Source: Podarcis muralis
Taxonomy: Eukaryota
Length of the DNA stretch: 64,000 nucleotides
Direction: 5' to 3'
Assembly: GCF_964188315.1 (NCBI RefSeq)
Contig: NC_135656.1
Coordinates: forward strand, 8,556,001-8,620,000
The notes below the pieces were generated by a model that worked only from the letters and a program-made list of their open reading frames with translations, did not search any database and had not been told where the DNA came from. The position numbers were made by a program, and so were the translations under genes. This document shows, in pieces, positions 16,018 to 62,500 of the stretch (the stretch's first letter is position 1; every line of letters starts with the position of its first letter).

Positions 16018-17292
16018 TTAAAAAATTACCCAAATACTTAAAATAACAACACCACATGCCTCCTCAGTGGATTTCAGAACAAATATGTCTCTCTCTTTTT
16101 AAATTACTCAAACACTGCAATGCAAGGAGTTGCAGTGACAATGCAGTGAGATTCTACTCAGAGTAAGCCTATTGGAATGAATGGGTTTGAATAAGTTGTG
16201 TCCTTTAGTTTTTGCTTTTTATCTGGATAATACCTAATTAGGGATAGGGATTGGTTTGCTTTCTTTCTGTTCTGGTTTTTATTAAGTATTGATTCCACAA
16301 ATTGCACATCAGGATTCATTACATAGTAAGTCCCCCCCCCCCCCCCCGTTCTATTATCAGCTTTCCATCCCATTTCCTAAGATGTTTTTTTTCTTTTCCA
16401 ACCTTAGCTGCAACTTATCTTCCCTCTTTTATATCGTAACTCTAATGCTCTATTAGAATTAAAAGAGGGGGAAACCCAGCCGGATGGGCGGGGTCTAACT
16501 AAATTATTATTATTATTGTCGTTTTATTTTTGTGTGTGTGTTTTTATCTTGTATAAAAGATTAAAACACACAAAAAAACAGAGTTGAAGCAAGAAGGCAT
16601 CTTCAAATATTAAATAAATGCAAGCAGTGAATTGCCAGGACTTGGAAGCCCCCTCCTAGTGATGAATTCACTCTTTCCACCCACCCACCCTTTCAAAAAT
16701 GTGCATGGAATGAATGAGCTGGCATTCAATTCTATTCTTTTAAAAGCATATTTTCTTTTATTATTGGGTCCATTCTGACAAATATTGGGTCCATTCTCTC
16801 ACTTCTGACCCTTCTTGATCCCCTCATTCCTGGGGGTTAGACTAGATGACCCATGGGGTCCCTTCCAACTCTTCCTTTCTACAATTCTCTCGCCTACAAT
16901 TCCGACACCCGCTTCAGGTGAACCTGCACAAACAACGCTGACACCAAACCCTACGTATAGTAAGGTAAAATAGAAAAATCGCCACCCGACCCCACCCCCA
17001 CCCATCTTCCCCCCCCCTCCACCTCTTTCCCCTTTTCTTCCTAATGTCTCAACAAATGAAAATGATTTGTAAAAATGTTACATGGGGGAAAATACATGAA
17101 AGAGAGACATTGCACACTTTTGTAAATCAACAAAATCTTTAATAAATAAATAAATACTATTCATAAAAAAGAGGCCTCCTCACCTGAAGGACATCAAAGC
17201 CCATCTGAAGTCCCAAAACAAAACTATCAGATCCTGATCCACGCAGATCCATGCGTGTATGGAGCGATCTGTGTGGATCTGCATCTGATAGT

Positions 17293-18288
17293 TTACGACT
17301 CCCTGTTGTAGGGAATCACATATATAATTGTATGTTTGGGGACATCAGGTGGGCTTTGATGTCCTTCAGGTGAGCTTTGGGGTGTATGGCTTTCCTCCAT
17401 CTCCTCTTCGCAGGATTCCTCTGGAATGACAAAATCTTCCGCATGGCTTTCCTCCATCTCATCTGTGGATTTCTCTTCAATTACGAGATCCAGCAGAGAA
17501 CCACACTTTCCACAAGTAGTTAGACTCTCGCTTTTTGCTGCGCTTCTTGGGGTAATCACCCTTACGGTCGCTATTTGACATTTATCTGTTGCGGTGGTCT
17601 TGACGCAAAATCTCTCAATCCCAACCAATGCTGCACTCAGCAGCTGGAAACCTGCAGCGATATAGCCTAGATAAATAGAAGGTCCAATATGCTGCTCGCT
17701 GGGAATTTGAGGCAATTCAAAAGCTTCAGGGAAGTCAATTTCCCCATTATGTAAGACGGCAGACATGTTCCATACCACGGAAATCAGGACGAGTATCCCT
17801 GCAACTAAGTTCAGGAAAGCTGCAAGCCTAAAAAAGGTTAACACAAAATTCTTATGTTTTCTGGGCTCGAACACATTGTACAAGGCAAATGAAATCAATC
17901 CCAGGGCCGTTGAATTCATAATGGACGCTAATGCCATTAAGTCCTGTGCAATAAAAATTTCCCTTGGGAGGCTTGGATGTTGCTCATTGAGATCTTCGCA
18001 ATGCCAAAAAGAGTTGCCGTCGTTAGAAGGGTCTTTCCAAAAGCAGACCTGCCAGATTCCAACCCAGATGTTTCCAGAGCCGATTCCCTTGATGTTTTCC
18101 ACACGCCACACTCGCCAGTTGACAACGGCTGTTGAGGCAATGCACATAATCCAGGCCGCAATATCTATCAGGAATGCACACAACTGGAGACCGGACACTA
18201 ATCTCAGCCACCTGACCACCAGGGAGCCTTCTTTCACCTGCATGGGGGGTTTGGAGAGCAGGGGACCAGGGGAGACCTTGGCAGACAT
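17293..18288 (-). CDS. CLDN34: Claudin-34-like gene, copy A (331 aa, single coding exon)
   Basis: Four hydrophobic helices and claudin ECL1 signature W..G[I/L]W-x2-C..C. Motifs WRVW, LPxEIxxAQ and LNxxAG...FPxxFxLP..P..QxIG match my recollection of CLDN34. ATG follows acceptor tttccag|G. Orthology is not tested. Confidence 0.88.
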   Translation of the reverse strand: MSAKVSPGPLLSKPPMQVKEGSLVVRWLRLVSGLQLCAFLIDIAAWIMCIASTAVVNWRVWRVENIKGIGSGNIWVGIWQVCFWKDPSNDGNSFWHCEDLNEQHPSLPREIFIAQDLMALASIMNSTALGLISFALYNVFEPRKHKNFVLTFFRLAAFLNLVAGILVLISVVWNMSAVLHNGEIDFPEAFELPQIPSEQHIGPSIYLGYIAAGFQLLSAALVGIERFCVKTTATDKCQIATVRVITPRSAAKSESLTTCGKCGSLLDLVIEEKSTDEMEESHAEDFVIPEESCEEEMEESHTPQSSPEGHQSPPDVPKHTIIYVIPYNRES

Positions 18289-23858: not shown

Positions 23859-23872
23859 TATTTAGCAGTTTG

Positions 23873-24154
23873 CTACTCCCTGTTGCAGGGAGTAACCTGT
23901 ATGATGGTATGTTTGGGGTTTTCCTCCATCTCCACTTCGCAGGATTCCTCTGGAATGATAAAATCTTCCGCATGGCTTTCCTCCATCTCAAGTGCGGAGG
24001 ATTTCTCTTCAATTACCAGATCCAGCAGAGAACCACACTTTCCACAAGGAGTTAGACTCTCGCTTTTTACCGCGCTTCTTGGGGTGATCAGCCTTACAGT
24101 TGCTATTTGACATTTATCTGTTGCGGTGGTCTTGGCGCAAAATCTCTCCGTCCC
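23873..24154 (-). pseudogene. Claudin-34-like 3' fragment 2 (ERFCAKTTATDKCQ...PCGKCGSLLDLV...NPKHTIIQVTPCNRE*)
   Basis: Open 3' frame homologous to the copy A tail; the 5' part with the TM domains is replaced by unrelated duplicated sequence. Confidence 0.85.
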
Positions 24155-29917: not shown

Positions 29918-31225
29918 ATGTCTTCCAAGGTCTCCCCTGCTCCCCTCCTCTCCAAACCCCCCCTGCGGGTGAAAGAAGGCTCCCTGGTAGTCAGATGGCT
30001 GAGATTAGTGTCCTGCCTCCGGTTGTGTGCATTCCTGATGGATATTATGGCCTGGATGATGTGCATTGCCTCAATAGCCATTGTCAACTGGCGAGTGTGG
30101 CGTGTAGAAAACATAAAGGGAATTGGCTCTGGAAACATCTGGATCGGAATCTGGCAGGTCTGTTTTTTGAAAGACCCTTCGAACGACGGAAACTATTATT
30201 ACCATTGTGAAGAGCTCCATGAACAACATCCAAACCTCCCGAGGGAAATTTTTATGGCTCAGGACTTAATGGCCTTAGCTGCCATTATGAATTCAGCGGC
30301 CCTTGGATTGCAGTCATTTGCCCTCTGCAATGTGTTCGAGCCCAGAAAACATAAGGATTTTCTCTCAACCTTTTTTGGGCTTGGAGCTCTGCTGAACTTA
30401 CCAGCAGGGATACTCATCCTGATTTCCGTGATATGGAACATGTCTGCTGTCTTACAAAATGGGGGAATTGACTTCCCTGAAACTTTTGAATTGCCTCAAA
30501 TTCCCAGCGAGCAGCATATTGGACCTTCTATTTATCTAGGCTATATCGCTGCAGGTTTCCAGCTGCTGAGTGCAGCATTGGTTGGGATGGAGAGATGTTG
30601 CATCAGGACCACCACAACAGATACATCTCAAATAGAAACTGTAGTGGTGATTACCCCAGGAAGTGCGGTGAAAAGCGAGAGTCTAACTACTTGTTCAAAT
30701 TGTGGTTCTCTGCTGGACCTGGTAATTCAAGAGAAATCCTCCACAGTGGAGATGGAGGAAACCCATGTGGAAGATCTTGTCAAATCCTGCGCAGTTGAGA
30801 TGGAGGAAGGCTGTACAAGTGATCTTGTCATTCCAGAGGAATCCTGCACAGTTGAGATGGAGGAAAGCTGTGCAAGTGATCTTGTCATTCCAGAGGAATC
30901 CTGCACAGTTGAGATGGAGGAAAGCTGTGCAAGTGATCTTGTCATTCCAGAGGAATCCTGCACAGTTGAGATGGAGGAAAGCTGTGCAAGTGATCTTGTC
31001 ATTCCAGAGGAATCCTGCGCAGTGGAGATGGAGGAAAGCTGTGCAAGTGATCTTGTCATTCCAGAGGAATCCTGCACAGTTGAGATGGAGGAAAGCTGTG
31101 CAAGTGATCTTGTCATTCCAGAGGAATCCTGCGCAGTGGAGATGGAGGAAAGCCATACACCCAAAGGTTACCTGAAGGACATCAAAGGCCACCTGATGTC
31201 CCCAAACATACCATTATACATGTGA
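29918..31225 (+). CDS. CLDN34: Claudin-34-like gene, copy B (435 aa; VNTR-expanded tail, frameshifted C-terminus)
   Basis: Same claudin core as copy A; ATG after tttccag|G at 29916/29917; open to TGA at 31223-31225. Confidence 0.85.
   Translation: MSSKVSPAPLLSKPPLRVKEGSLVVRWLRLVSCLRLCAFLMDIMAWMMCIASIAIVNWRVWRVENIKGIGSGNIWIGIWQVCFLKDPSNDGNYYYHCEELHEQHPNLPREIFMAQDLMALAAIMNSAALGLQSFALCNVFEPRKHKDFLSTFFGLGALLNLPAGILILISVIWNMSAVLQNGGIDFPETFELPQIPSEQHIGPSIYLGYIAAGFQLLSAALVGMERCCIRTTTTDTSQIETVVVITPGSAVKSESLTTCSNCGSLLDLVIQEKSSTVEMEETHVEDLVKSCAVEMEEGCTSDLVIPEESCTVEMEESCASDLVIPEESCTVEMEESCASDLVIPEESCTVEMEESCASDLVIPEESCAVEMEESCASDLVIPEESCTVEMEESCASDLVIPEESCAVEMEESHTPKGYLKDIKGHLMSPNIPLYM
30784..31153 (+). 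repeat. Coding minisatellite: six full 57-bp units plus a partial (19-aa SC[T/A]VEMEESCASDLVIPEE)
   Basis: Units start at 30784, 30841, 30898, 30955, 31012 and 31069, with a partial at 31126. Confidence 0.97.
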
Positions 31226-32766
31226 TTCCCTACAACAGGGAGTCGTAAACTATCAGATGCAGATCCACGCAGATCGCTCCATACACGCATAGATCTGTGT
31301 GGATCAGGACTTCAGGGATTTTGGGACTTCAGGTGGGCTTTGATGTCCTTCAGGTGAGGAGGCCTCTTTTTTGTGATTTTTTTAAAAAAGTATTTATTTA
31401 TTTATTAAAGATTTTGTTGATTTACAAAAGTGTGCAATGTCTCTCTCTCATGTTTTTCCCCCCATGTAACATTTTTACAAATCATTTTCATTTGTTGAGA
31501 CATTAGGAAGGAAAGGGGAAAGAGGTGGAGGGGGGGAAAGATGGGTGGGGGTGGGGTCGGGTGGCCTATGGTGTGGTTATTCATTTGTAGTTGGCTGTGG
31601 TGGTCTTTGTTTTCATGTGTGAGTGGGGTGGGTGGGTGTTTTGGATCAGCAACAAATCTACTTATTCCAAGACCTCCCTTAAAGCGGTAGTGGATCACCA
31701 TGAAGAAGGCGCCACCACTGAGAAGGCCTCTGCCTGGTTCCCTGTAACTTGGCTGCTCCCAGAGATGGGGGGGGGGGTCATATTATTTCCCTTGATTTCC
31801 CCCTCTGAAAACTAGGTGCGCCCTATGGTCAGGTGAGCCCTATAGAGCGAAAAATACTGTAATAATAATTTAGTTAGACCCCGCCCATCCGGCTGGGTTT
31901 TCCCCTCTTTTAATTCTAATAGCGCATTAGAGTTCTGATATAAAAAAGGTTTGTCCTGGAATATCAGTTCTGGGAGGGGGGAAGAGCTAAGTGCCTTCAT
32001 GCCCTGCCTGGAAGCTTCCTTGAATCATCCGTCCGGTTTTTGTGGACATCAGTGCATTGGACTAGAATGGGCTATCGGTCTGTTTGCATGATCTTAAGCA
32101 ATTGTGAGGTTGGGTAACTCGCAATCTGAACAGCAGTGCCATTTCCTAGAAAGTCAAACATATTTTCTGTTTCTGTGATATTAAGCTTTACTTAGAATAA
32201 GATACATTCTCCCCAAATCGCAGTCTCCCTCTGTCCTCATCTGCCACAGTCCACAAAAGTCTGGGTGTCTTTTTCTGTCGACCTTGTGCTTTCCAAACAA
32301 CTGGCCTCCTCCCAAACCGTAGTGCTTATATACTGGGATGGATCTCGTACACGGAAAACCACAAGAAGAATTCATTTCCGCAGCATCTGTTAACAGCCCT
32401 CCCCCCCAATCTCTGAAATTCCAAAGAGCTCAATATGGTTTCCAGAACCCTGAGAAAGCTGCAGTTCCCAGCACCTTTAACAAACTACAGTTCCCAGGAT
32501 TCTTGGTGGGGGCGCCTTAAATGTACGGTGCGGCTACCAGTGTTGCAAAGCAAAGTTCACAGTCCTAAAAAGAAAGCTGGCTTAAGCAGGAATATAGGTC
32601 CCCAATTAAGGGCTGCTTCAAGCAGGAAGGTAGAGAGGCAGTGCGGCCTAGTGGTAAGACTGCCAAACTAGCACCTGGGAGGCACTGGGGCTCAAATCCC
32701 CCACTCGGCTATGAAGCCACATCTAAAAGAGCATAGAAATAAACAAGACCGCGAAATGATACAAAC

Positions 32767-41373: not shown

Positions 41374-44114
41374 TATGTTGCTATTACTATTATTATTATT
41401 ATTATTACTATTACTATTAGCTTTGGAATGGTCATGGGGGGTAATTTGCAGGAAATGTGTGGCTTACTGTGTTTCTTTTTTAAAAAAGATCTGTTTGCAA
41501 AAGGTATGTATAGAAAATCAATCAATCAATTAGTAATAGGTCCTCAAAGCACCAGGGGAGGTACTGCTGCTAGAAACTATTCCCCCTCCCCGCCCGTCCC
41601 ACTTCTAATGCAAACCCCCTTCCTCAATCAAGATGGGATTTCAGTTGAAGGTCTTGCTAAAATAGAGTTTGACAACTTGGGGGTTTCAGCAGGAAATTCA
41701 AGGGAGCCCCCTGCCTGAATGAGACTGGATTCCCCTGCTAAAACGAAGAAGGGGGACTGTTAAGGAGACAAACCCATTTCTGAATCAAGAAGGGGTTCGC
41801 TTGGAATCCCGCCCAACTGAGCAGAATTTAAGCCCTGCTCATCGGCTGACGTTGAAAACCAGACATCGCCCAGCCCTGGGCAGGATGGCACACCGAGCCT
41901 CCTCACATCTGTTCAAAGGAGGCTGCATAGCGGGGGGGGGGGCATGCTTGTATCATTTCGTGGTCTTCTTTATTTCTATGCTCTTTTAGATGTGGCTTCA
42001 TAGCTGAGAGGGGGATTTGAACCCCGGTGCCTCCCAGGTGCTAGTTTGGCAGTCTTACCACTAGGCCGCACTGCCTCTCCACCTTCCTGCTTGAAGCAGC
42101 CCTTAATTGGGAATCTATATTGCTGCTTAAGCCAGCTTTCTTTTTAGGACTGTGAACTTGGCTTTGCAACCCTGGTAGCCGCACCCTACATTTAAGGCGC
42201 CCCCACCAAGAATCCTGGGAACTGTAGTTTGTTAAAGGTGCTGGGAACTGCAGCTTTCTCAGGGTTCTGGAAACCATATTGAGCTCTTTGGAATTTTCAG
42301 AGATTTGTGGGGGGCTGTTAATTGTTGCTGCGGAAATGAATTCTTCTTGTGGTTTTCCGTGTACGAGATCCATCCCAGTATATAAGCACTACGGTTTGGG
42401 AGGAGGCCAGTTGTTTAGAAAGCACAAGGTCAACAGAAAAAGACACCCAGACTTCTGTGGACTGTGGCAGATGAGGACAGAGGGAGACTGCGATTTGGGG
42501 AGAATGTATCTTATTCTAAGTAAAGCTTAATATCACAGAAACAGAAAATATGTTTGACTTTCTAGGAAATGGCACTGCGGTTCAGATTGCGAGTTACCCA
42601 ACCTCACAATTGCTTAAGATCATGCAAACAGACCGATAGCCCATTCTAGTCCAATGCACTGATGTCCACAAAAACCGGACGGATGGTTCAAGGAAGCTTC
42701 CAGGCAGGGCATGAAGGCACTTAGCTCTTTCCCGCTCCCAGAACTGATATTCCAGGACAAACCTTTGTTTTGATCCTGCAAATGCATCTCTTGCTCATCT
42801 TTTGGGTTAACTGTGCAAATCGTTCCTGGCATCCTGAAAACTCAAAGAGTTACAAAGGCACTTCTCCAATTGTGCACTCTGTGGAGAATTCTGCTGCAGA
42901 AACCACCTTCATGCCTACAGCTGCCTAGAGTGACGTGCAGAGAAGATGTCAGGATCTTCCAAATTACTGCTTCAAAGGAGCATCTGAGGCCACTGTAACT
43001 GTTTTTGTTCTTCGGGAAATTTTCTAATCACAAAGCCAGGATTCCCAAGAACTAAAAAGGTGGAGATCTTGCAGGGGAGGGAGAACTTGGTGCTGCTCCC
43101 TTAGGTTCCAATATTCCCAGAAACTGCAGAGAAGGAGGAGCCAGGAGATTTGGAATATTACCCAAAGAAAAATAAGCAGATGAAGGGCCTGTGGCAGAGG
43201 GGGGGACGGGGACCTGGCACCCTACTCTGCTGCCTATTTGCACAATTCATGTAGCAGTATAGAGCATGCGCAGCAGAACTTCACTGCCTTTTGGAATACT
43301 GCTTTTGCTGCTTCCCGTTTAATACCACCAGCCTAATCCCACACAAGTTTTGAATCATGCCCCACAGCCGGGCGATGTTCCTCCCGCCTCAAGGGGAGCC
43401 TCTTTTGCAGGGCTAGTGAGTCTGGGCCTAGGCCAGGTGAAAAGGGTTGTGCAGGGTGCGGCCTTCACGCCCAACAGCCAGGCAATTTTATGTCATACCA
43501 CACCATATGGCAGCCATTTTGTGTTTTGCTTTGTTCTCACTGGTAGCCAATTGGTGGACTGGCCCATGTAGCACTTTCCCAAAATTGGTCTGCCTCCATA
43601 TAAGACAGCTTCCTCTGTTCTTATCATATGAAATACGCCACTTTGTATATTAATAAGAGCACAGGATGTTCTGCATTTATATCCTAAAAGGGTGGGGGGC
43701 GAATCTCATGAGCGATATGTCCAAATGTGTTTTTACACTTGGGGGGCTGCTGCGTCGCTTGTTCCTGAACCTTTTCTTCCTCCCAAATGCCCTGAAGATC
43801 CATTGCACACCTTGACTTGCATGAAACCTCCTCTCTCTTATTTTCTCAGGGAACCAGACTGGGAGAAGGAGGAATGAAGGAAAACAGAAATCCGGCCTGA
43901 GAACGGAGGTCCCTGTCAAGAGAATGGCCAAGATCTCCTCAGGTGAGGATGAAAGGGGAGGCAGGGAAAAGCAAAGAGCCCCTGAAAACATCCCCCCACT
44001 CGGGAAGAAGCTTTTAATTCCTCTGAATTTGATATCTCCTTTAGATTTTTAAAGGCTGGCTCCCAGAATTATTTCAGGTGAAATAGATGGATTTAGGCCC
44101 CTTGCTTGTGAATG

Positions 44115-44730
44115 GGCATATTACAATATTGTTCTATATTATCCCAAAGGGGGGAGGTTTCTACACCAGCCAGCGGGACAGGATTTTTTCTGTTGCTTAA
44201 ATGTTACAGTAAAATGGGCCTCTCTTTGGAATGTCTGGCTTAGAGGGGTAAAAGATAAGAGCAAGGTTGAATGGGTGTTATTGTGGCCCCAGACGGGGGG
44301 AGACTGAAGACAAGGAGGCAAGTTGAAAGGGAGGAGGATAACGCAGGAGACAAAGCCCCATCTTAATGCTATTAGTACAAATCACATGTTTTACATTTGA
44401 ACACGTGTCGAGGTTCATGGCGTGGAGAGGCTGGTGCAGGAAGAAAAGGGGGGGGGGCAAGCCCATGTAAGGACATTGGAAGTTGCCATAACTTTCGGTT
44501 TACAAGAAATCAGGTGGCTTACAAGAGATCAGGTGGTATTCTATTCTGCAAATCTATATCAAGGGGGCGCACCCAGACTGGGTGTGCAGGTTGCGTACTT
44601 ATCGCCCTGTACCTTTGTTCTGCATATATGCACTTCAAATAAAATCCTGTTAATAACCTGCAAGGACGTTTTGCCGCTTTGTGTGAATCTGTGCTTCAGG
44701 GACCCAATAGCAGATGTGGTTGGTCCTTCA
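44115..44730 (+). mobile_element. LTR-like segment upstream of copy C; mirrored at about 60392-61007 upstream of D
   Basis: Replaces about 90 bp present in A and B; AATAAA at 44638-44643, ends in CA; no TSD found. Confidence 0.4.
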
Positions 44731-45543
44731 AAAGGAACAGAAAGAAAGCAACACAAATATTTTGATGGAAGTGTCTTAGGAAAGCGATTTTAAATCATGG
44801 ACACCTAGGTTCTGAAAATGGTATAGCCTATATTGGTGTGAGGGATGGGGTCCCATGGCACAAATTCCATGTGGTCCCAGTGCAAAGGAAAAGAGCTAAG
44901 ATCTTCTCCCTTACTATAACGTCCAAACAAGATGGGATGGGGAAGAAGAAGGATAGGTTTGTAAGGAGTCTTCAATAATTTTGCCAAGGAAATTCTTATG
45001 GTTCAGGGCCTCACTCTATTAGCCTTTCTTGTACATGGAGATCCTTTATGAAATGCATTCAGACCCATCAAACAAATCTGTACTGAGATACACATACTGT
45101 ATCACCATTTTTACTGCTGGAACTGCTCTGAATCTGACTTCAGGAAGAACGCGTTTTACCTGCACAGTGTCCTGGAATAGACACTCTGCATTGGGAAAGA
45201 AGGGAACTGAGTTCCCTCCCATTTTCCACTTTCCTGATGTTCCAAATGACCAGTACCTTGGAGTTATGATTTGTGGTGTTGTCAGGATTCTAACTGGCCT
45301 GTAACTGACCTAAGAATTCTGCAGAGCAGTTGCTGCTGTGGCTGGCCGGCTGCTCAGGCGAACATCAGCTCAGTGGCCAACAGCTCAGTCTTCTTGAGGC
45401 TCAGGAACACCTAGCAAATACCTGCTCTGTTCCTGGCACGCTAGACTCTAGCTGAGGAAGGCATTTCACGTAAGTTTATGGATTAAACATTCCTCACTAT
45501 GCCATCAGGTGTGCTTATGTTCAGTGGAAAAAGATAGGTGCAG

Positions 45544-45867
45544 TAAAGGTAAAGGGACCCCGACCATTAGGTCCAGTCGTGACCGACTCTGGGGTTGTGG
45601 CGCTCATCTCGCTTTATTGGCCGAGGGAGCCGGCATACAGCTTCTGGGTCATTATTAAGCTGCTTCTGGCAAACCAGAGCAGTGCACAGAAACGCCGCTT
45701 ACCTTCCCGCCGAAGCGGTACCTATTTATCTACTTGCACTTTGACGTGCTTTCGAACTGCTAGGTTGGCAGGAGCAGGGACCGAGCAACGGGAGCTCACC
45801 CCATCGCGGGGATTCGAACCGCCAACCTTCTGATCGGCAAGTCCTAGGCTCTGTGGTTTAACCCACA
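45544..45867 (-). mobile_element. Sauria SINE in the putative 5'UTR intron of C; mirrored at 59264-59588 in D
   Basis: Near full length; absent from A and B. Confidence 0.88.
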
Positions 45868-46172
45868 AAACAGCAAAATCATGAGCAGCTTTCCATCCAC
45901 AACAGCTTGCTGAGGTTCTGGCCATTTTCACAGGAACAATGCAACAGTAGATTAAATCAGTAGCAGTGTGCTGGAAGAAAGTATGAGTGTCGGCTTCTCT
46001 GGATCAGATGTCTCTACCTAACCAGGGGGTGGGAGAGAGCAGGAACTCTTTTCTTTTGCTGCTTCTTTCTGTGCATGGAAGGAAGAATGCAGGAGGGAGG
46101 ATGTCCTTCAATGACTAGACATGCTTGTTATTCCCTCTCTCACTGCATCTTGTCTTCTCTTTTGTTTCCAGG

Positions 46173-47171
46173 ATGTCTGCCAATGTCTCCCCTGGTCCCC
46201 TCCTCTCCAAACCCCCCATGTGGGTGAAAGAAGGCTCCCTGGTGGTCCAATGGCTGAGCTTAGTTTCCGGCCTCCAGATATCTGCATTCCTGGTGGATAT
46301 TTTGGCCTTGTCAATGTGCATTTTGTCAACACTCAGTGTCAACTGGCGAGTGTGGAGTGTGGAAAACATCGAGGGAATCGGCTCTGGAAACATCTGGATT
46401 GGAATCTGGGATGTCTGCTTTTGGAAAGACCCTGCTAACGACGGCAACTCTTTTTGGCATTGCGAAGACCTCAATGAGCAGCATCCAACCCTCCCGAAGG
46501 AAATTTTTATTGCACAGGATTTAATGGCATTAGCTTCAATTATGAATTCAGTGGCCCTGGGATTAATTTCATTTGCCTTGTACAACGTGTTCAAGCCCAG
46601 AAAACATAAGGATTTTCTCTTTCGCTTTTTTAGGCTTGGAGCTTTCCTGAACTTAGTTGCAGGGATACTCGTCCTGATTTCTGTAGTATGGAACACGTCT
46701 GCTGTCTTGCAAAATGGGGAAATTGACTTCCCTGAAACTTTTGAATTGCCTCAAATTCCCAGCGAGCAGCATATTGGACCTTCCATTTATCTAGGCTATA
46801 TCGCTGCAGGTTTCCAGCTGCTGAGTGCAGCATTGGTTGGGATTGAGAGATGTTGCATCAGGACCACCACAACAGATACATCTCTAATAGAAACTGTAGT
46901 GGTGATTACCCCAGGAAGCGCGGTGAAAAGCGAGAGTCTAACTACTTGTTCGAAGTGTGGTTCTCTGCTGGATCTGGTAATTCAAGAGAAATCCTCCACA
47001 GTGGAGATGGAGGAAAGCTGTGCAAAAGATCTTGTAATTCCAGAGGAATCCTGCGCAGTAGAGATGGAGGAAAGCCGTACGCCCCAAAGCTCACCTGAAG
47101 GACATCAAAGTCCACCTGAAGTCCCAAAACATACTATTATACATGTTATACCCTACAACAGGGAGTCGTAA
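46173..47171 (+). CDS. CLDN34: Claudin-34-like gene, copy C (332 aa)
   Basis: Intact ORF with claudin signature; ATG after tttccag|G. Confidence 0.88.
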   Translation: MSANVSPGPLLSKPPMWVKEGSLVVQWLSLVSGLQISAFLVDILALSMCILSTLSVNWRVWSVENIEGIGSGNIWIGIWDVCFWKDPANDGNSFWHCEDLNEQHPTLPKEIFIAQDLMALASIMNSVALGLISFALYNVFKPRKHKDFLFRFFRLGAFLNLVAGILVLISVVWNTSAVLQNGEIDFPETFELPQIPSEQHIGPSIYLGYIAAGFQLLSAALVGIERCCIRTTTTDTSLIETVVVITPGSAVKSESLTTCSKCGSLLDLVIQEKSSTVEMEESCAKDLVIPEESCAVEMEESRTPQSSPEGHQSPPEVPKHTIIHVIPYNRES

Positions 47172-47904
47172 ACTATCAGATCCAGATCAACGCAGATCGC
47201 TCCATACACGCATGGATCTGCGTGGATCATGGTTTTGATAGTTTTGTTTTGGGACTTCAGGTGGGCTTTGATGTCCTTCAGGTGAGGAGGCCCTTTTTTA
47301 TGACTAGTAGTTATTTATTTATTTGTTAAAGATTTTGTTGATTTACAAAAAGGGGGAAGAGGTGGGGGGGGGAGATGGGGGGGTCGGGTGGCGATTTTTC
47401 TATTTTACTTACTATACGTAGGGTTTGGTGTCAGCATTGTTTGTGCAGGTTCTTTGCTGTCTGCTTGTAATTAATAAACCAATTAATAAACCAATATTAA
47501 TTAAAATATTGACTCTGTTCGCACGCTCTCGTCCCATTTTTCAGAGCCTCCTCCAGAGCAGACCCACTAATGCCTAACCGGTAGGTCTACTCCTGTGTAG
47601 GATTCAGTTCTTGATAATTGTGCACTTGGGTCTGGGTTAAAGGCGGATCTACACGGATCCTCATGGATCCTCCACTTTTTAAAAAATAACTCCAACAAAT
47701 GCAGTGTCAAATCACACCTGGAAGGCACGCCTACAGACTGGACTATCAAAAACGTGGATGCAGCACCACAAAAACATGGACTCGAGGCATGGATCCTCAT
47801 GAATTCATATGATTTTTATAGTGAAACAAAATAAAACACCATGATACTGTAGACCGCTTTTTAGTCTGTAAGCAGAACCAAAAAAATCACGCATCCACTG
47901 TTTC

Positions 47905-48700
47905 GTGCTGCCGAAATGGAGCAAAAACATGGTTAAAAAAACACGGATCCTGATGGATCCTCATGATTTTTGCATTAGATCAGGCCAAAGTCACCATCAG
48001 ATCAAATATCATGGCCATGGGCACAGTATCCACCACAAAAATCACGAATCCACGGCTTCGTGGCGACACCGTAGCCCAAAAACGTGGTTTTGAAGCACGG
48101 ATCCTCCTGGATCCTCACGCTTTTTGCATTGGGCCACCCCAAACTCACCGTCAAATCACACATCATGTCCAGCGGCACAGCCTGCATCACAAAAAACTCA
48201 GATCCACAGCTTCCTGGTCATACCATGGCCCAAAAACGTGGTTTTGAAGCACGGATCCTCATGGATCCTCACGCTTTTTCCATTGGGCCACCCCAAGGTA
48301 AAGGTAAAGGGACCCCTGACCATTAGGTCCAGTCGTGACCGACTCTGGGGTTGTGGCACTCATCTCGCTTTATTGGCTGAGGGAGCCGGCCTACAGCTTC
48401 CGGGTCATGTGGCCAGCATGACTAAGCCGCTTCTGGCACCGTAGTCCAAAAACGTGGTTTTGAAGCACGGATCCTCCTGGATCCTCACGCTTTTTGCATT
48501 GGGCCACCCCAAACTCACCGTCAAATCACACGTCATAGCCAGGGGCACAGCCTGCACCACAAAAAAACTCGGACCCACGGATTCCTGGCCACTGCATGGC
48601 TCAAAAACGTGGTTTTGAAGCACGGATCCTCATGGATCCTCACTCTTTTCACATTGGGGTTCCCTAAACTCACCGTCAAATCACACACCATAGCCATCAG
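47905..48700. repeat. ~154-bp GGATCC-rich tandem repeat array, left arm, with a SINE 3' fragment at 48297-48438
   Basis: Monomer period 153-154 bp (e.g. aacgtgg at 48081 and 48235). Confidence 0.88.
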
Positions 48701-54420: not shown

Positions 54421-55116
54421 AAAAAATGATAGTTTATAAATTTTACCCAAAAGGTAGAACTCTGTTATGATGGACTCAAATCCTGTCTTTTCACTGATTT
54501 AAATGTTTGCCATACAGTCTTTCTTGAATCTGGATATTAGTTGACAGTATGTAAGCAGTTTCATATTTTTTCTCCTCTTTAATACTTTGGCGTGTATTTG
54601 ATCTGTTCTTGAAGATGAACCATATCCTGGTACAATATATAGTCATATATTCTCCTATCGGCTCTAATAATAATGTTCCAGTGGTGACATTAACAGTGCA
54701 GGTAAGGACATTTTTGTGATTTTTGTAGTGCAACTCATGATTTTTGTGGTGCAGGGTGTGCCCCTGGCTACGATGTGTGATTTGACGGGGAGTTTGGGGA
54801 GCCCCAATGTGAAAAGAGTGAGGATCCATGAGGATCCGTGCTTCAAAACCACATTTTTGGGCCATGGAGTGGCCAGGAAGCTGTGGGTCCTAGCTTTTGT
54901 GTTGCAGGCTGTGCCCCTGGCTATGACGTGTGATTTGACGGTGATTTAGGGATGGCCCAATGCAAAAAGCATGAGGATCCATGAGGATCCGTGCTTCAAA
55001 ACCACGTTTTTGGGCCACGGTATGACCATGGCCGTGGATCCGAGTTATTTGTGGTGCAGGCTGTGCCGCTGGACATGATGTGTGATTTGATGGTGAGTTT
55101 GGGGTGGCCCAGGGAC

Positions 55117-56404: not shown

Positions 56405-57960
56405 TTGGGGTGGCCCAATGGAAAAAGCGTGAGGGTCCATGAGGATCCGTGCTTCAAAACCACGTTTTGGGGCCATGGTATGACCAGGAAGCCGTGGATC
56501 CGAGTTTTTTGTGGTGCAAGCTATGCCCCTGGGCATGATGTGTGATTTGATGGTGATTTAGGGGTGGCCCAGAGCAAAAAGCGTGAGGATCCGTGAGGAT
56601 CTGTGCTTCAAAACCACGTTTTTGGGCCATGGGGTGGCCAGCAAGCTGTGGGTCCGAGTTTTTGTGTTGCAGCCTGTGCCCCTGGCTATGACGTGTGATT
56701 TGATGGTGATTTAGGGGTGGCCCAATGCAAGAAGCATGAGGATCCAGGAGGATCCGTGCTTCAAAACCACGTTTTTGGGCCATGGTATGACCAGGAAGCC
56801 GTGGATCCGAGTTTTTTGTGGTGCAGGCTGTGCCGCTGGACATGATGTGTGATTTGACGGTGAGTTTGGGGTGGCCCAATGCAAAAAGTGTGAGGATCCA
56901 GGAGGATCCGTGCTTCAAAACCACGTTTTTGGGCTACGGTGTCGCCAGGAAGCTGTGGATTCGTGATTTTTGTGATGGATACTATGCCCATGGCCATGAT
57001 ATTTGATCTGATGGTGACTTTGGCCTGATCTAATGCAAAAATCATGAGGATCCATCAGGATCCGTGTTTTTTAACCATGTTTTTGCTCCATTTCGGCAGC
57101 ACGAAACAGTGGGTGCGTGCTTTTTTTGGTTCTGCTTACAGACTAAAAAGTGGTCTACAGTATCATGGTGTTTTTATTTTGTTTCACTATAAAAATCATA
57201 TGAATTCATGAGGATCTATGCCTCGGATCCATGTTTTTGTGGTGCTGCATACACATTTTTGATAGTCCAGTCTGTAGGCGTGCCTTCCAGGTGTGATTTG
57301 ACACTGCATTTGTTGGAGTTATTTTTTAAAAAGTGGAGGATCCATGAGGATCCGTGTAGATCGGCCTTTAACTCAGACCCAAGTGCACAATTTATCAAGA
57401 ACTGAATCCTACACAGGAGTAGACCCACCGGTTAGGCTTTAGTGGGTCTGCTCTGGAGGAGGCTCTGAAAAACAGGATGACAGCGTGCCTTAAGACCGGC
57501 CAAGATCATGTGAACAGAGTCAATATTTTAATTAATATTGGTTTATTAATTGGTTTATTAATTACAAGCAAACAGCAAAGAACCTGCACAAACAATGCTG
57601 ACACCGAACCCTACGTATAGTAAGTAAAGTAGAAAAATCGCCACCCGACCCCACCCCCACCCATCTTTCCCCCCCTCCAACTCTTTCCCCTTTTCTTCCT
57701 AATGTCTCAACAAATGAAAATGATTTATAAAAATGTTACATAGGGGGGGAAATACATGAGAGACATTGCACACTTTTGTAAATCAACAAAAGCTTAAATA
57801 AATAAATAAATAAATAAATAACTACTAGTCATAAAAAAGCGCCTCCTCACCTGAAGGACATCAAAGCCCACCTGAAGTCCCAAAACAAAACTATCAAAAC
57901 CATGATCCACGCAGATCCATGCGTGTATGGAGCGATCTGCGTTGATCTGGATCTGATAGT

Positions 57961-58959
57961 TTACGACTCCCTGTTGTAGGGTATAACATGTATAATAGTA
58001 TGTTTTGGGACTTCAGGTGGACTTTGATGTCCTTCAGGTGAGCTTTGGGGCGTACGGCTTTCCTCCATCTCTACTGCGCAGGATTCCTCTGGAATTACAA
58101 GATCTTTTGCACATCTTTCCTCCATCTCCACTGTGGAGGATTTCTCTTGAATTACCAGGTCCAGCAGAGAACCACACTTCGAACAAGTAGTAAGACTCTC
58201 GCTTTTCACCGCGCTTCCTGGGGTAATCACCACTACAGTTTCTATTAGAGATGTATCTGTTGTGGTGGTCCTGATGCAACATCTCTCAATCCCAACCAAT
58301 GCTGCACTCAGCAGCTGGAAACCTGCAGCGATATAGCCTAGATAAATAGAAGGTCCAATATGCTGCTCGCTGGGAATTTGAGGCAATTCAAAAGTTTCAG
58401 GGAAGTCAATTTCCCCATTTTGCAAGACAGCAGACATGTTCCATACCACAGAAATCAGGACGAGTATCCCTGCAACTAAGTTCAGGAAAGCTCCAAGCCT
58501 AAAAAAGCGAAAGAGAAAATCCTTATGTTTTCTGGGCTTGAACACATTGTACAAGGCAAATGAAATTAATCCCAGGGCCACTGAATTCATAATTGAAGCT
58601 AGTGCCATTAAATCCTGTGCAATAAAAATTTCCTTCGGGAGGGTTGGATGCTGCTCATCGAGGTCTTCGCAATGCCAAAAAGAGTTTCCGTCGTTAGAAG
58701 GGTCTTTCCAAAAGCAGACATCCCAGATTCCAATCCAGATGTTTCCAGAGCCGATTCCCTCGATGTTTTCCACACTCCACACTCGCCAGTTGACACTGAG
58801 TGTTGACAAAATGCACATTGACAAGGCCAAAATATCCACCAGGCATGCAGATATCTGGAGGCCGGAAACTAAGCTCAGCCATTGGACCACCAGGGAGCCT
58901 TCTTTCACCCACATGGGGGGTTTGGAGAGGAGGGGACCAGGGGAGACATTGGCAGACAT
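57961..58959 (-). CDS. CLDN34: Claudin-34-like gene, copy D (332 aa; 5 aa differences from C)
   Basis: Intact ORF; differences from C counted by eye: F/C, A/S, N/D, T/M, S/R. Confidence 0.88.
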   Translation of the reverse strand: MSANVSPGPLLSKPPMWVKEGSLVVQWLSLVSGLQISACLVDILALSMCILSTLSVNWRVWSVENIEGIGSGNIWIGIWDVCFWKDPSNDGNSFWHCEDLDEQHPTLPKEIFIAQDLMALASIMNSVALGLISFALYNVFKPRKHKDFLFRFFRLGAFLNLVAGILVLISVVWNMSAVLQNGEIDFPETFELPQIPSEQHIGPSIYLGYIAAGFQLLSAALVGIERCCIRTTTTDTSLIETVVVITPGSAVKSESLTTCSKCGSLLDLVIQEKSSTVEMEERCAKDLVIPEESCAVEMEESRTPQSSPEGHQSPPEVPKHTIIHVIPYNRES

Positions 58960-59263
58960 CCTGGAAACAAAAGAGAAGACAAGATGCAGTGAGAGAGGGA
59001 ATAACAAGCATGTCTAGTCATTGAAGGACATCCTCCCTCCTGCATTCTTCCTTCCATGCACAAAAAGAAGCAGCAAAAGAAAAAGTTCCTGCTCTCTCCC
59101 ACCCCCTGGTTAGGTAGAGACATCTGATCCAGAGAAGCCGACACTCATACTTTCTTCCAGCACACTGCTACTGATTTAATCTACTGTTGCATTGTTCCTG
59201 TGAAAATGGCCAGAACCTCAGCAAGCTGTTGTGGATGGGAAGCTGCTCATGATTTTGCTGTTT

Positions 59264-59588
59264 TGTGGGTTAAACCACAGAGCCTAGGACTTGCCGATCA
59301 GAAGGTTGGTGGTTTGAATCCCCGTGACGGGGTGAGCTCCCGTTGCTCGGTCCCTGCTCCTGCCAACCTAGCAGTTTGAAAGCACGTCAAAGTGCAAGTA
59401 GATAAATAGGTACCGCTCCGTTGGGAAGGTAAGCGGCGTTTCTGTGCACTGCTCTGGTTTGCCAGAAGCAGCTTAATAATGACCCAGAAGCTGTATGCCG
59501 GCTCCCTCGGCCAATAAAGCGAGATGAGCACCACAACCCCAGAGTCGGTCACAACTGGACCTAATGGTCGGGGTCCCTTTACCTTTAC
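59264..59588 (+). mobile_element. Sauria SINE; mirror of 45544-45867
   Basis: Same junctions. Confidence 0.88.
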
Positions 59589-62500
59589 TGCACCTATCTT
59601 TTCCCACTGAACATAAACACACCTGATGGCATAGTGAGGAATGTTTAATCCATAAACTTACGTGAAATGCCTTCCTCAGCTAGAGTCTAGCGTGCCAGGA
59701 ACAGAGCAGGTATTTGCTAGGTGCTCCTGAGCCTCAAGAAGACAGAGCGAGCTATTGGCCACTGAGCTGACGTTCGCCTGAGCAGCCGGCCAGCCACAGC
59801 AGCAACTGCTCTGCTGAATTCTTAGGTCAGTTACAGGCCAGTTAGAATCCTGACAACACCACAAATCATAACTCCAAGGTACTGGTCATTTGGAACATCA
59901 GGAAAGTGGAAAATGGGAGGGAACTCAGTTCCTTTCTTTCCCAATGCAGAGTGTCTATTCCAGGACACTGTGCAGTTAAAACGCGTTCTTCCTGAAGTCA
60001 GATTCAGAGCAGTTCCAGCAGTAAAAATGGTGATACAGTATGTGTATCTCAGTACAGATTTGTTTGATGGGTCTGAATGCATTTCATAAAGGATCTCCAT
60101 GTACAAGAAAGGCTAATAGAGTGAGGCCCTGAACCATAAGAATTTCCTTGGCAAAATGATTGAAGACTCCTTACCAACCTATCCTTCTTCTTCCCCATCC
60201 CATCTTGTTTGGACGTTATAGTAAGGGAGAAGATCTTAGCTCTTTTCCTTTGCACTGGGACCACATGGAATTTGTGCCATGCGACCCCATCCCTCACACC
60301 AATATAGGCTATACCATTTTCAGAACCTAGGTGTCCATGATTTAAAATCGCTTTCCTAAAAATATTTGTGTTGCTTTCTTTCTGTTCCTTTTGAAGGACC
60401 AACCACATCTGCTCTTGGGTCCCTGAAGCACAGATTCACACAAAGCGGCAAAACATCCTTGCAGGTTATTAACAGGATTTTATTTGAAGTGCATATGCAG
60501 AACAAAGGTACAGGGCGATAAGTACGCAACCTGCACACCCAGTCAGGGTGCGCCCCCTTGATATAGATTTGCAGAATAGAATACCACCTGATCTCTTGTA
60601 AGCCACCTGATTTCTTGTAAACCGAAAGTTATGGCAACTTCCAATGTCCTTACATGGGCTTGCCCCCCCCACCTTTTCCTTCCTGCACCAGCCTTTCCAC
60701 GCCATGAACCTCGACACGTGTTCAAATGTAAAACATGTGCTTTGTACTAATAGCATTAAGATGGGGCTTTGTCTCCTGCGTTATCCTCCTCCCTTTCAAC
60801 TTGCCTCCTTGTCTTCAGTCTCCCCCCGTCTGGGGCCACAATAACACCCATTCAACCTTGCTCTTATCTTTTACCCCTCTAAGCCAGACATTCCAAAGAG
60901 AGGCCCATTTTACTGTAACATTTAAGCAACAGAAAAAATCCTGTCCCGCTGGCTGGTGTAGAAACCTCCCCCCTTGGGGATAATATAGAACAATATTGTA
61001 ATATGCCCATTCACAAGCAAGGGGCCTAAATCCATCTATTTCACCTGAAATAATTCTGGGAGCCAGCCTTTAAAAATCTAAAGGAGATATCAAATTCAGA
61101 GGAATTAAAAGCTTCTTCCCGAGTGTGGGGATGTTTTCAGGGGCTCTTTGCTTTTCCCTGCCTCCCCTTTCATCCTCACCTGAGGAGATCTTGGCCATTC
61201 TCTTGACAGGGACCTCCCTTCTCAGGCCGGATTTCTGTTTTCCTTCATTCCTCCTTCTCCCCGCCTGGTTCCCTGAGCAAATAAGAGAGAGGAGGTTTCA
61301 TGCAAGTCAAGGTGTGCAATGGATCTTCAGGGCATTTGGGAGGAAGAAAAGGTTCAGGAACAAGCGACGCAGCCGCTCCCCAAGCGGAAAAACACATTTG
61401 GACACATCGCTCATGAGATCTGCCCCCCACCCTTTTAGGATATATATGCAGAACATCCTGTGCTCCTATTAATATACAAAGTGGGGTATTTCATATGATA
61501 AGAACAGAGAAAGCTGTCTTATACGGAGCCAGACCAATTTTGGGAAAGTGCTACATGGGCCAGTCCACCAATTGGCTACCAGTGATAACATAGCAAAACA
61601 CAAAATGGCTGCCATATGGTGAGGTATGAAATAAATTTGCCTGGCTGTGGGGCGTGAAGGCCGCACCCTGCAAGACCCTTTCCACGTGGCCTAGGCCCAG
61701 ACTCGCTAGCCCCACAAAAGAGGCTCCTCATGAGGCCAGAGGAACATGGCCTGGCTGTGGGGCATGATTCGAAACCTCCAGTCCCAGTCCGGTGCTCTAA
61801 CCACTAAACCACACTGCCCCCCCATTGCAGTCTATAACAGCCTGAAGGGCCACAGATGCCCCATATTCTCTGGCTCTGAGATTGTCAACTGTTCCCTCCC
61901 TTTCCCTTGTTGTGCAAAAAGAAAAATGCCCATGAGAAAATGTGACCTTTTTGGTTCTTTGGAGACAGTTCTGCTCCCCCGCCTCTCCAATTAAAGGAGC
62001 CTCATTCCTTTTCCCACCCAACTTCCTCCTGCGCGCAGCTTCAAAATTTCCATAAAGAACTAACTAACTAACCAACCATAATTGGAATGTACGAGATTAA
62101 GGAGATAATTTATTTTTATATAATGAAAATAAATGGGAGGATAAATTAATTGTGCAAGACAAGAATATATAGGATGGCAAAAATCAAAAGAAACAAAGAT
62201 TATGAGTTGGGTTCTTAAAATAACAACACCACATGCCTCCTCAGTGGATTTCAGAACAAATATGTCTCTCTTTTTTTAAATTACCCAAACACTGTAATGC
62301 AAGGAGTTGTAGTGACAATGCAGTGAGATTCTACTCAGAGTATGCCTATTGGAATGAATGGGTTTGAATTAGTTGTGTCCTTTAGTTTTTGCTTTTTATC
62401 TAGATAATACCTAATAAGGGATAGGGATTGGTTTGCTTTCTTTCTGTTCTTGTTTTTATTAAGTATTTTGTTGTGTTGTTGTTGAAATTCCACAAATTGC

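What the first reader, a model, noticed from the sequence alone, without database searches (positions are those of the whole stretch)
47090..47286. Built-in ~200-nt fold-back across the last codons, stop and 3'UTR of every intact paralog (candidate hairpin-RNA or self-silencing module)
Seen in C: coding 47090-47131 is the reverse complement of 3'UTR 47245-47286 (41 of 42). Nested inside are a 9-bp stem (47170-47178 / 47236-47244) and a 14-bp stem (47185-47198 / 47215-47228, 1 mismatch). The same structure occurs in A (17179-17374, with a near-perfect 74-nt hairpin at 17221-17294), B (31170-31358) and D (57846-58042). Both 3' fragments lack the coding arm and the hairpin. Inference: the mRNA can form long dsRNA over its own C-terminal codons, making it a possible Dicer/ADAR substrate or termination/stability element. 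Any siRNAs would match all paralogs, reminiscent of hpRNA control of amplified germline genes in Drosophila. It may instead be only a template-switch scar.
Basis: partly seen in the sequence, partly recalled or inferred. Interest (0 to 1): 0.8.

Follow-up and report, generated by a model that had tools for sequence, protein, structure and literature searches.

The report
Fold-back across lizard claudin stop codon
Each copy of an amplified wall-lizard claudin-34-like gene carries, just after its stop codon, a backwards copy of its own last codons that can fold into a long RNA hairpin; it looks like the slowly decaying leftover of one old copying accident, with no proven function.

Summary
In copy C, 47090-47131 pairs with 47245-47286 (41/42), enclosing a 75-nt inner hairpin. 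As RNA it folds at -124.5 kcal/mol (z = -15.8). Copies A (minus strand), B and D (minus strand) carry the same structure. So do 12 more copies from three Podarcis species.

The gene is a single-exon claudin-34-like gene. The coding arm, the last 12 codons and the left side of the inner hairpin are ancestral: they are recognisable in Rhineura, and the coding arm also in Zootoca. The right half is missing at all three loci examined in those two species. The fold-back is therefore an inverted duplication of the gene's own 3' end, most likely a replication template switch, made before the family amplified. It is not a transposon.

Among 13 copies there is no compensatory change: 16 of 67 stem pairs vary only by breaking and 5 only by wobble. 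The longest uninterrupted helix has eroded from 42 bp to about 15 bp in some subfamilies. Fragments without a coding sequence keep the fold-back.

One oddity remains: the UTR arm alone evolves 3-4 times more slowly than its surroundings.

No poly(A) signal lies upstream of the UTR arm, so it is probably transcribed. This is an inference.

The scan noted this structure before on another window of this genome (s1-152540), with the same reading.

The parts
46173..47171 (+). Copy C: single-exon claudin-34-like coding sequence (332 aa from the MSANV start, stop TAA at 47169-47171)
   Evidence: ORF found. Pfam Claudin_2 E = 7.8e-12. 93% identical to P. raffonei claudin-34-like.
47090..47131 (+). Copy C: coding arm (codons for SPEGHQSPPEVPKH), 5' strand of the outer stem
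   Evidence: Inverted repeat 41/42. The peptide is conserved in Podarcis and recognisable in Rhineura. The same DNA is present in Zootoca L007 without any fold-back.
47132..47169 (+). Copy C: 38-nt unpaired stretch (last 12 codons TIIHVIPYNRES and the first base of the stop) with no counterpart in the 3' half
   Evidence: Fold; alignments. It is the fastest-evolving part of the element.
47170..47244 (+). Copy C: inner hairpin (29/30-nt stems, 16-nt loop at 47199-47214)
   Evidence: -35.8 kcal/mol, z = -8.0. The left stem is homologous to the Rhineura 3'UTR, which does not fold.
47245..47286 (+). Copy C: 3'UTR arm, the reverse complement of the coding arm; it ends in CAG|GTGAG
   Evidence: It keeps the ancestral states C22, A31 and A37 of the coding arm. 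It is the slowest-evolving segment: 4 steps over 41-42 sites.
47473..47478 (+). Copy C: first AATAAA after the stop. The ATTAAA that other copies have about 40 nt after the arm reads GTTAAA here.
17179..17374 (-). Copy A fold-back (gene on the minus strand): UTR arm 17179-17220, inner hairpin 17221-17294, 38-nt stretch 17295-17332, coding arm 17333-17374
   Evidence: Three non-pairs in the outer stem. Coding sequence 17293-18288. ATTAAA at 17138-17143.
31167..31358 (+). Copy B fold-back, the most degraded; the coding arm is read in a different frame (…GYLKDIKGHLMSPNIPLYM, stop at 31223-31225)
   Evidence: Six outer-stem non-pairs; MFE -99.3. ATTAAA at 31404-31409.
57846..58042 (-). Copy D fold-back (gene on the minus strand), 197/197 identical to C
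   Evidence: Coding sequence 57961-58959. C and D are arms of a large inverted duplication.
23867..23953 (-). 3' fragment of a paralog type that lacks the coding arm (48-nt in-frame gap) and the hairpin
   Evidence: The same type is seen in P. lilfordi (P0075) and in a Logan contig (L011).
15913..15991 (-). Second 3' fragment of the arm-less type

Best explanation
The fold-back is the product of one old inverted duplication of the gene's own 3' end, most likely a replication template switch in which the new strand folded back and copied itself. The source was the last codons plus the first ~30 nt of the 3'UTR of a claudin-34-like gene. The copy lies immediately downstream in reverse complement and lacks a 38-nt stretch. 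The event happened in the lineage leading to Podarcis, shortly before the gene family amplified, so every descendant copy inherited it, including fragments with no coding sequence. The copy lies upstream of the first poly(A) signal, so the mRNA should carry a 42-bp plus 29-bp hairpin across its stop codon. Nothing in the sequences shows that the pairing is maintained by selection: it erodes by uncompensated substitutions. What is shown: the structure, its presence in all copies, that the left half is ancestral, that the right half is absent from the outgroup loci, and that covariation is lacking. What is inferred: the template-switch mechanism, transcription of the UTR arm, and neutrality.
For: 1. 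The structure is real and far beyond chance. 2. The coding arm encodes a tail that is conserved in Podarcis and recognisable in Rhineura. Rhineura DNA aligns through the coding arm, the 38 nt, the stop and the left inner stem, then loses homology. It has no inverted repeat there and no excess folding, z = 0.31. 3. Zootoca L007 has the coding arm at 95.6% identity (43 of 45 nt) but no UTR arm. Zootoca L002 has neither. 4. The UTR arm preserves the states C22, A31 and A37, which match the Zootoca coding arm, while most Podarcis coding arms have since changed to T31 and C37. The UTR arm is thus a fossil copy of the ancestral coding arm. 5. All 16 copies share the same asymmetry (38 nt missing from the 3' half) and the same A·A mismatch in the inner stem, which points to a single origin. 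6. No compensatory change was found. Of 42 outer-stem pairs, 31 are invariant, 2 vary by wobble only and 9 by breaking only. Of 25 inner-stem pairs the counts are 15, 3 and 7. The covariation score is 0.016 against 0.018 for shuffles. 7. Non-pairs in the outer stem range from 0 to 6 per copy. 8. Fragments without a coding sequence (mur_3, mur_4, lil_2) keep the fold-back. 9. Template switching is a documented way to create perfect hairpins in one event (PMC8794818, PMC10710096). 10. No AATAAA or ATTAAA lies inside the fold-back. A conserved ATTAAA followed by a GU-rich block lies 32-53 nt after it in 11 of 13 copies.
Against: The UTR arm has only 4 parsimony steps over 41-42 sites, against about 12 expected from the non-CpG rate of the coding sequence (Poisson P about 0.009; about 16 expected from third codon positions). 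That hints at constraint on this arm. C and D are identical over all 197 nt, although their 4-kb arms differ at 2.2% of sites (about 4 differences expected, P about 0.014). Both Zootoca loci have rearranged 3' ends, so loss there cannot be told from absence, and the dating rests mainly on Rhineura. The 38-nt gap in the copy needs a second step. No RNA data were available, so transcription of the arm is inferred, not shown.
Confidence: 0.7

Rival explanations
1. The hairpin is a functional cis-acting dsRNA element of the mRNA, kept by weak purifying selection. It could be a guide for ADAR editing of the C-terminal codons, a Drosha/Dicer-cleaved element that destabilises or silences the message, or a Staufen/PKR-type dsRNA signal. 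It would be too young to show covariation.
For: A 42-bp near-perfect duplex plus a 29-bp inner stem is predicted in every copy, with MFE from -97 to -124 kcal/mol. The arm lies upstream of the first poly(A) signal. Stem segments together evolve more slowly than the unpaired 38 nt, loop and flank: 24 steps over 138 sites against 27 over 67. The UTR arm is 3-4 times slower than its surroundings. The family is highly amplified in Podarcis, the setting in which hairpin-RNA control is known in flies (my own knowledge, not tested). The inner hairpin has pre-miRNA-like size and energy (PMC10710096).
Against: There are no compensatory changes, and 16 stem pairs vary only by breaking. The coding arm evolves at roughly the background rate (0.26 against 0.29-0.37 steps per site), and the inner right stem evolves fast (0.46), so the slow-down is not symmetrical as selection on pairing would predict. 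The longest perfect helix has shrunk to about 15-25 bp in most subfamilies. Fragments without a coding sequence keep the structure equally well. One copy (lil_2) has lost the inner hairpin entirely. There is no Rfam match. Ribosomes must unwind the outer stem on every pass, because its 5' strand is coding.
Confidence: 0.17
2. The UTR arm is conserved for a sequence-specific role unrelated to pairing. Candidates are an upstream element of the nearby poly(A) site, a binding site, or its CAG|GTGAG match to a 5' splice site. On this reading the fold-back itself is incidental.
For: Only the UTR arm is slow, not its partner. The neighbouring ATTAAA/GU-rich block is conserved to a similar degree. The arm ends in a consensus donor-like CAGGTGAG.
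Against: No transcript or splice evidence could be obtained. The deficit of substitutions rests on 42 sites and one family tree. About 9% of all 42-nt windows in the locus are equally conserved.
Confidence: 0.1
3. The element is a miniature inverted-repeat or foldback transposon that inserted into the 3' end of the ancestral gene and supplied its last codons.
For: It has 42-nt terminal inverted repeats around a 113-nt core, about 197 nt in all.
Against: The flanks show no target-site duplication (…CCCCAAAG | element | GAGGCC…). All copies in the window and in 11 fetched loci sit at this gene's 3' end. The 5' arm, the 38 nt and the left inner stem are ancestral gene sequence in species that lack the repeat.
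Confidence: 0.02

Closest known systems
Hairpins created by replication template-switch mutations (Monttinen & Loytynoja 2022, PMC8794818; Monttinen et al. 2023, PMC10710096)
   Same: A reverse-complement copy of adjacent, pre-existing sequence appears in one lineage inside a transcribed region and gives a near-perfect stem at once. Outgroups lack the copy.
   Different: The copied tract is long (about 71 nt retained, about 109 nt if the 38 nt were first included), whereas the events described in those papers are short. It spans coding sequence, stop codon and UTR. It was then multiplied by gene amplification. No small-RNA product is known.
Drosophila hairpin-RNA (hpRNA) loci that silence amplified, fast-evolving testis genes (from my own knowledge, not checked here)
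   Same: An inverted duplication derived from the sequence of the gene family it could target; the family is amplified and fast-evolving.
   Different: hpRNAs are separate non-coding loci with arms of hundreds of bp, processed by Dcr-2/AGO2. Here the arms are 42 + 29 bp, lie in cis in the mRNA itself, and occur in a vertebrate. No siRNAs are shown, and the pairing decays without compensation.
Intramolecular dsRNA in vertebrate mRNAs: inverted Alu pairs in 3'UTRs, and exon/editing-complementary-sequence hairpins such as Kv1.1 and GluA2 (from my own knowledge)
   Same: A duplex of 30 bp or more within one transcript, with one strand in or next to coding sequence. In principle it is a substrate for ADAR, Staufen or PKR.
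   Different: The arms derive from the gene's own codons rather than from repeats, or from long-conserved complementary sequences. Editing was not tested, and there is no conservation beyond one genus.
MITEs and foldback transposons
   Same: An element of about 200 bp with long terminal inverted repeats.
   Different: No target-site duplication, no dispersed copies, and one arm is ancestral coding sequence.

Membership tests
Template-switch / inverted-duplication hairpin | The new arm is the reverse complement of adjacent, pre-existing sequence | tested here: met
   The right half is the reverse complement of the coding arm plus the left inner stem. The left half is ancestral, present in Rhineura, and the coding arm also in Zootoca.
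Template-switch / inverted-duplication hairpin | Outgroups lack the inverted copy at the orthologous place | tested here: met
   No inverted repeat in Rhineura L001, Zootoca L002 or Zootoca L007. The Rhineura UTR folds no better than shuffles. Caveat: both Zootoca 3' ends are rearranged.
Template-switch / inverted-duplication hairpin | Explained by a single event with defined switch points | tested here: inconclusive
   The copy lacks 38 nt of the source, so a second step or a double switch is needed. No close outgroup was available for ancestral reconstruction.
hpRNA / endo-siRNA hairpin | Long inverted repeat homologous to the target gene family | tested here: inconclusive
   The homology is perfect because the hairpin is part of the gene itself, but the arms are only 42 + 29 bp.
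hpRNA / endo-siRNA hairpin | Pairing maintained over time (compensatory or co-evolving changes) | tested here: not met
   No compensatory pair in the two long stems; 16 pairs vary only by breaking; covariation is at or below shuffles.
hpRNA / endo-siRNA hairpin | Dicer-dependent 21-23-nt small RNAs from the stem | not testable with these tools
   No small-RNA data could be reached.
MITE / foldback transposon | Target-site duplication flanking the terminal inverted repeats | tested here: not met
   Flanks are CCCCAAAG and GAGGCC.
MITE / foldback transposon | Dispersed copies independent of one host gene; an empty site in relatives | tested here: not met
   All copies are at the claudin-34-like 3' end. 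The 5' arm is ancestral coding sequence.
Canonical pri-miRNA | A stem of about 35 bp, an apical loop of 10 nt or more, and single-stranded basal flanks (PMC10710096) | tested here: inconclusive
   The inner hairpin has a 29-bp stem and a 16-nt loop, z about -8. Its base continues into a 42-bp helix, with a 38-nt bulge on one side only.
Canonical pri-miRNA | Match to a described miRNA family | tested here: not met
   Rfam scan at E of 1 or less over 46000-48000: no hit inside 47090-47286.
ADAR / dsRNA-binding-protein substrate in an mRNA | An intramolecular duplex of about 30 bp or more within the mature transcript | tested here: inconclusive
   The duplex is predicted in all copies. That the UTR arm is in the transcript is inferred only from poly(A) signal positions.
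ADAR / dsRNA-binding-protein substrate in an mRNA | A-to-I editing or protein binding observed | not testable with these tools
   No RNA-seq was accessible.
Claudin / PMP22 family (host gene) | Pfam Claudin_2 / PMP22_Claudin domain above the gathering score | tested here: met
   45.8 bits against a cut-off of 29.1, and 30.5 against 26.7. The nearest named proteins are claudin-34-like of Podarcis.

The most novel reading that the evidence does not exclude
The inverted copy was co-opted. The UTR arm would be kept (it evolves 3-4 times more slowly than its neighbours) because it pairs with the last codons in the nuclear transcript. That pairing would make the mRNAs of a 50-plus-copy claudin-34-like family either ADAR-recoded in their cytoplasmic tail or self-limiting through Drosha/Dicer cleavage. 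This would be a vertebrate, in-cis counterpart of hairpin-RNA control of amplified genes, born by a single template switch just before the family expanded.
Probability: 0.12. Interest if true: 0.7.

Novelty: new member of a known kind. Interest (0 to 1): 0.3.

Why it matters
The locus is a clean natural example of how one replication error can write a very stable, roughly 70-bp hairpin across the stop codon of a working gene. It also shows how gene amplification can then spread that hairpin to dozens of mRNAs. The ancestral half, the derived half and the outgroup state can all be read directly from sequence.

If the hairpin turned out to be processed or edited, it would be a rare vertebrate case of a gene family carrying its own dsRNA trigger. 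As the evidence stands, it is mainly a caution. A striking fold with z about -16, shared by all paralogs, is explained by common descent and need not be functional.

The dozens of copies per genome make selection on pairing testable from sequence alone, once they are all collected.

Tried and rejected
- **Transposon (MITE/foldback) origin: rejected.** There is no target-site duplication, no dispersed copies, and the arm is ancestral coding sequence.
- **Known RNA family: none.** The Rfam scan at E of 1 or less over 46000-48000 gave no hit in the fold-back.
- **Covariation support: none**.
- **Arm-to-arm gene conversion: not seen.** No derived state is shared by both arms of a copy. T31 and C37 in the coding arm persist against the unchanged UTR arm in 11-12 of 16 copies.
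- **Regional homogenisation among paralogs as the cause of UTR-arm conservation: unlikely.** The 38 nt and the inner right stem next to it are among the fastest segments.
- **Transcript evidence: not obtained.** A search with the C-terminal 110 aa for short products from sequencing-run assemblies found one Logan contig (L011). It is a genomic-looking fragment of the arm-less type with no poly(A) tail, so it says nothing about the UTR arm.
- **Dating with Zootoca: ambiguous.** One locus lacks the arm region and the other has unrelated sequence right after the stop.
- **Literature: nothing on reptiles.** A search for claudin-34 found nothing about reptile copies or this hairpin.
- **Assembly artefact: rejected.** The structure recurs in three independent assemblies.

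Full report
**1. What is there**

Copy C has a 42-nt inverted repeat, 47090-47131 against 47245-47286, with 41 of 42 positions complementary and 113 nt between the arms. Nested inside are the stems 47170-47184/47230-47244 and 47185-47198/47215-47228. The arm sequence occurs seven times in the window at three or fewer mismatches, against none expected, and always at four places.

As RNA, 47080-47296 folds at -124.5 kcal/mol. Shuffled sequences give -54.2 +/- 4.5, so z = -15.8.

The same anatomy is found in three other copies:

| Copy | Coordinates | Strand | Outer arms |
|---|---|---|---|
| A | 17179-17374 | minus | 93% complementary, plus a 29-bp inner stem |
| B | 31167-31358 | plus | 37 nt, 92% |
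| D | 57846-58042 | minus | 98% |

Read in the direction of the gene, every copy has the same order of parts:
- a coding arm of 42 nt;
- a 38-nt unpaired stretch, which holds the last 12 codons and the stop in A, C and D;
- an inner hairpin with stems of about 29 bp and a 16-nt loop;
- a UTR arm of 42 nt.

C and D are identical over all 197 nt. They sit in the arms of a large inverted duplication, 43347-48294 against 61775-56714.

**2. The host gene**

The ORF ending at 47171 has a Claudin_2/PMP22_Claudin domain. Its nearest relatives are 'claudin-34-like' proteins of Podarcis raffonei (93%), P. lilfordi and P. muralis, followed by Zootoca, Rhineura, Elgaria, Varanus and Paroedura.

Cluster listings show dozens of such proteins per Podarcis genome. 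They also mask four members as the window's own, on a contig of 126,814,402 bp. That is the length of the P. muralis record OZ076955.1, so the window is from P. muralis.

**3. Which half is old**

The peptide encoded by the coding arm and the 38 nt, SPEGHQSPPEVPKHTIIHVIPYNRES, is conserved in all Podarcis sequences. It is recognisable in Rhineura as SAESPEDPPVHIPKHSVIFVTPCK.

Rhineura DNA aligns with Podarcis through the coding arm, the 38 nt, the stop and the left inner stem (…GTAAAGTATCAGATCCTTATCAAAACAGATC). Homology then fades. Rhineura has no inverted repeat there, and its UTR folds no better than shuffles, z = 0.31.

The two Zootoca loci differ from each other:
- L007 has the coding arm at 95.6% identity (43 of 45 nt) but unrelated sequence after the stop, and no UTR arm.
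- L002 lacks the arm region altogether.

The reverse complement of the UTR arm carries C22, A31 and A37. These are the states of the Zootoca coding arm. Most Podarcis coding arms have since changed to T31 and C37.

So the right half is a derived reverse-complement copy of the gene's own 3' end, and it preserves the ancestral state of its source. All 16 copies share the missing 38 nt and one A·A mismatch in the inner stem, which points to a single origin before the family diversified.

This is the pattern produced by replication template switching, which can create a perfect hairpin in one event (PMC8794818, PMC10710096). The mechanism itself is inferred. The 38-nt gap needs a second step.

**4. 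Not a transposon**

- The flanks carry no target-site duplication.
- Every copy in the window and in the fetched loci sits at this gene's 3' end.
- One 'terminal repeat' is ancestral coding sequence.

**5. Is the pairing kept?**

I collected 16 copies:
- four from the window;
- eight more from P. muralis (L003, L005, L008-L010);
- two from P. raffonei (L004);
- two from P. lilfordi (L006).

On 13 of them, pair counts for the two long stems were as follows:

| Stem | Pairs | Invariant | Wobble only | Broken only | Compensatory |
|---|---|---|---|---|---|
| Outer | 42 | 31 | 2 | 9 | 0 |
| Inner | 25 | 15 | 3 | 7 | 0 |

The covariation score is 0.016, against 0.018 for shuffles.

Non-pairs in the outer stem run from 0 (C, D, lil_1) to 6 (the B type). 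The longest uninterrupted helix falls from 42 bp to about 15 bp in the mur_1-5 subfamily.

Three copies without any coding sequence upstream (mur_3, mur_4, lil_2) still carry the fold-back. In lil_2 the inner hairpin has been cleanly deleted.

This is what an inherited, slowly decaying inverted duplication looks like.

**6. One thing that does not fit simple decay**

Parsimony steps per non-CpG site, on a tree of 12 copies:

| Segment | Steps per site |
|---|---|
| Coding sequence | 0.29-0.37 |
| Coding arm | 0.26 |
| 38-nt stretch | 0.57 |
| Inner left stem | 0.19 |
| Inner right stem | 0.46 |
| UTR arm | 0.098 (4 steps over 41 sites) |

Against the non-CpG rate of the coding sequence, the UTR arm has 4 steps where about 12 are expected (Poisson P about 0.009). 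Against third codon positions the deficit is larger. About 9% of all 42-nt windows in the locus are as conserved, mostly in the fourth membrane span.

Because the partner coding arm is not slowed, selection on pairing is a poor explanation. Possible explanations are chance, a sequence-specific role of this arm, or low mutability. For a sequence-specific role, note that the arm lies about 40 nt upstream of a conserved ATTAAA/GU-rich block and ends in CAG|GTGAG. I leave this open and count it against full neutrality.

**7. Is the arm transcribed?**

No AATAAA or ATTAAA lies inside the fold-back in any of 13 copies. In 11 of them a conserved ATTAAA follows 32-53 nt after the UTR arm, with a CA and a GU-rich tract behind it. 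C and D have lost that hexamer and have AATAAA 187 nt and 287 nt downstream.

The arm is therefore very probably inside the 3'UTR, but this is an inference. My attempt to find transcript contigs gave only a genomic-looking fragment of another paralog type.

**8. How it would work if it did anything**

A 42-bp near-perfect duplex plus a 29-bp stem in a nuclear transcript is, from general knowledge, long enough for ADAR editing and for dsRNA-binding proteins. The inner hairpin has pre-miRNA-like dimensions. Against a cytoplasmic role, the 5' strand of the outer stem is translated, so ribosomes must open it on every pass. None of this can be tested here.

**9.

The two 3' fragments in the window (about 15913-15991 and 23867-23953, minus strand) do lack 48 nt covering the coding arm and have no hairpin. 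They belong to an arm-less paralog type that also exists in P. lilfordi and in a Logan contig.

**10. Verdict**

The hpRNA/self-silencing reading is unsupported.

I reached mine from my own tests before seeing it, and I do not count it as evidence.

Noticed in passing
window 43347-48294 and 56714-61775: Copies C (+) and D (-) are convergent genes in the arms of a large inverted duplication. The arms are 97% identical over about 5 kb (2.2% substitutions), with a spacer of roughly 8.4 kb. The fold-back itself is 197/197 identical between them, where about 4 differences would be expected.
   Followed up: partly
window 31167-31225; L008 11193-11384; L010 11079-11270: In the B-type paralogs a 1-nt deletion upstream makes the coding arm read in another frame (…GYLKDIKGHLMSPNI(P/Q)LYM, stopping 25 nt earlier). 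The same type, with the same rewritten right inner stem (GGACTTCAGGG), occurs at two other P. muralis loci on two chromosomes. It is therefore an established subfamily, not a one-off pseudogene.
   Followed up: partly
window 15750-16050 and 23700-24060 (minus strand); L011: An arm-less paralog type has a 48-nt in-frame gap that removes PQSSPEGHQSPPEV, and different sequence after the stop. In the Logan contig L011 the tail-coding piece is preceded by a splice-acceptor-like ttctgtag|G, so these 'fragments' might be used as exons.
   Followed up: no
L005 4414-4609 and 15258-15453; L006 16444-16578: These 3' fragments begin about 16 nt upstream of the coding arm. They keep the fold-back but have no claudin coding sequence upstream. 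Their shared breakpoint lies next to the palindrome. In L006 the inner hairpin is cleanly deleted.
   Followed up: partly
window 47279-47291 and the equivalent positions in all copies: The end of the UTR arm reads TTCAG|GTGAGGAGG, a consensus-like 5' splice site created as the reverse complement of CTCACCTG. A second site, TTCAG|GTGGGC, lies 20 nt upstream.
   Followed up: no
L003 4169-4184 / 4225-4240; window about 17040-17125 (copy A, minus strand): A second, smaller inverted repeat (TGATTTACAAAAGTGT / ACACTTTTACAAATCA) brackets the presumed poly(A) site just downstream of the fold-back in most copies.
   Followed up: no
window 30726-31238: A 57-nt coding tandem repeat (19-aa units, about 8 copies in B and 2 in C) lies directly upstream of the coding arm. 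Copy number varies between paralogs and species (proteins of 332 to 470 aa).
   Followed up: no
window 47939-48616, 54642-55051, 56407-57124: Arrays of a tandem repeat of about 154 nt lie in the spacer between C and D.
   Followed up: no
window 46173-47089 and its paralogs: Parsimony steps per codon position are 0.34, 0.24 and 0.44. The ratio of non-synonymous to synonymous change is therefore high, suggesting relaxed or diversifying selection in this amplified family.
   Followed up: partly
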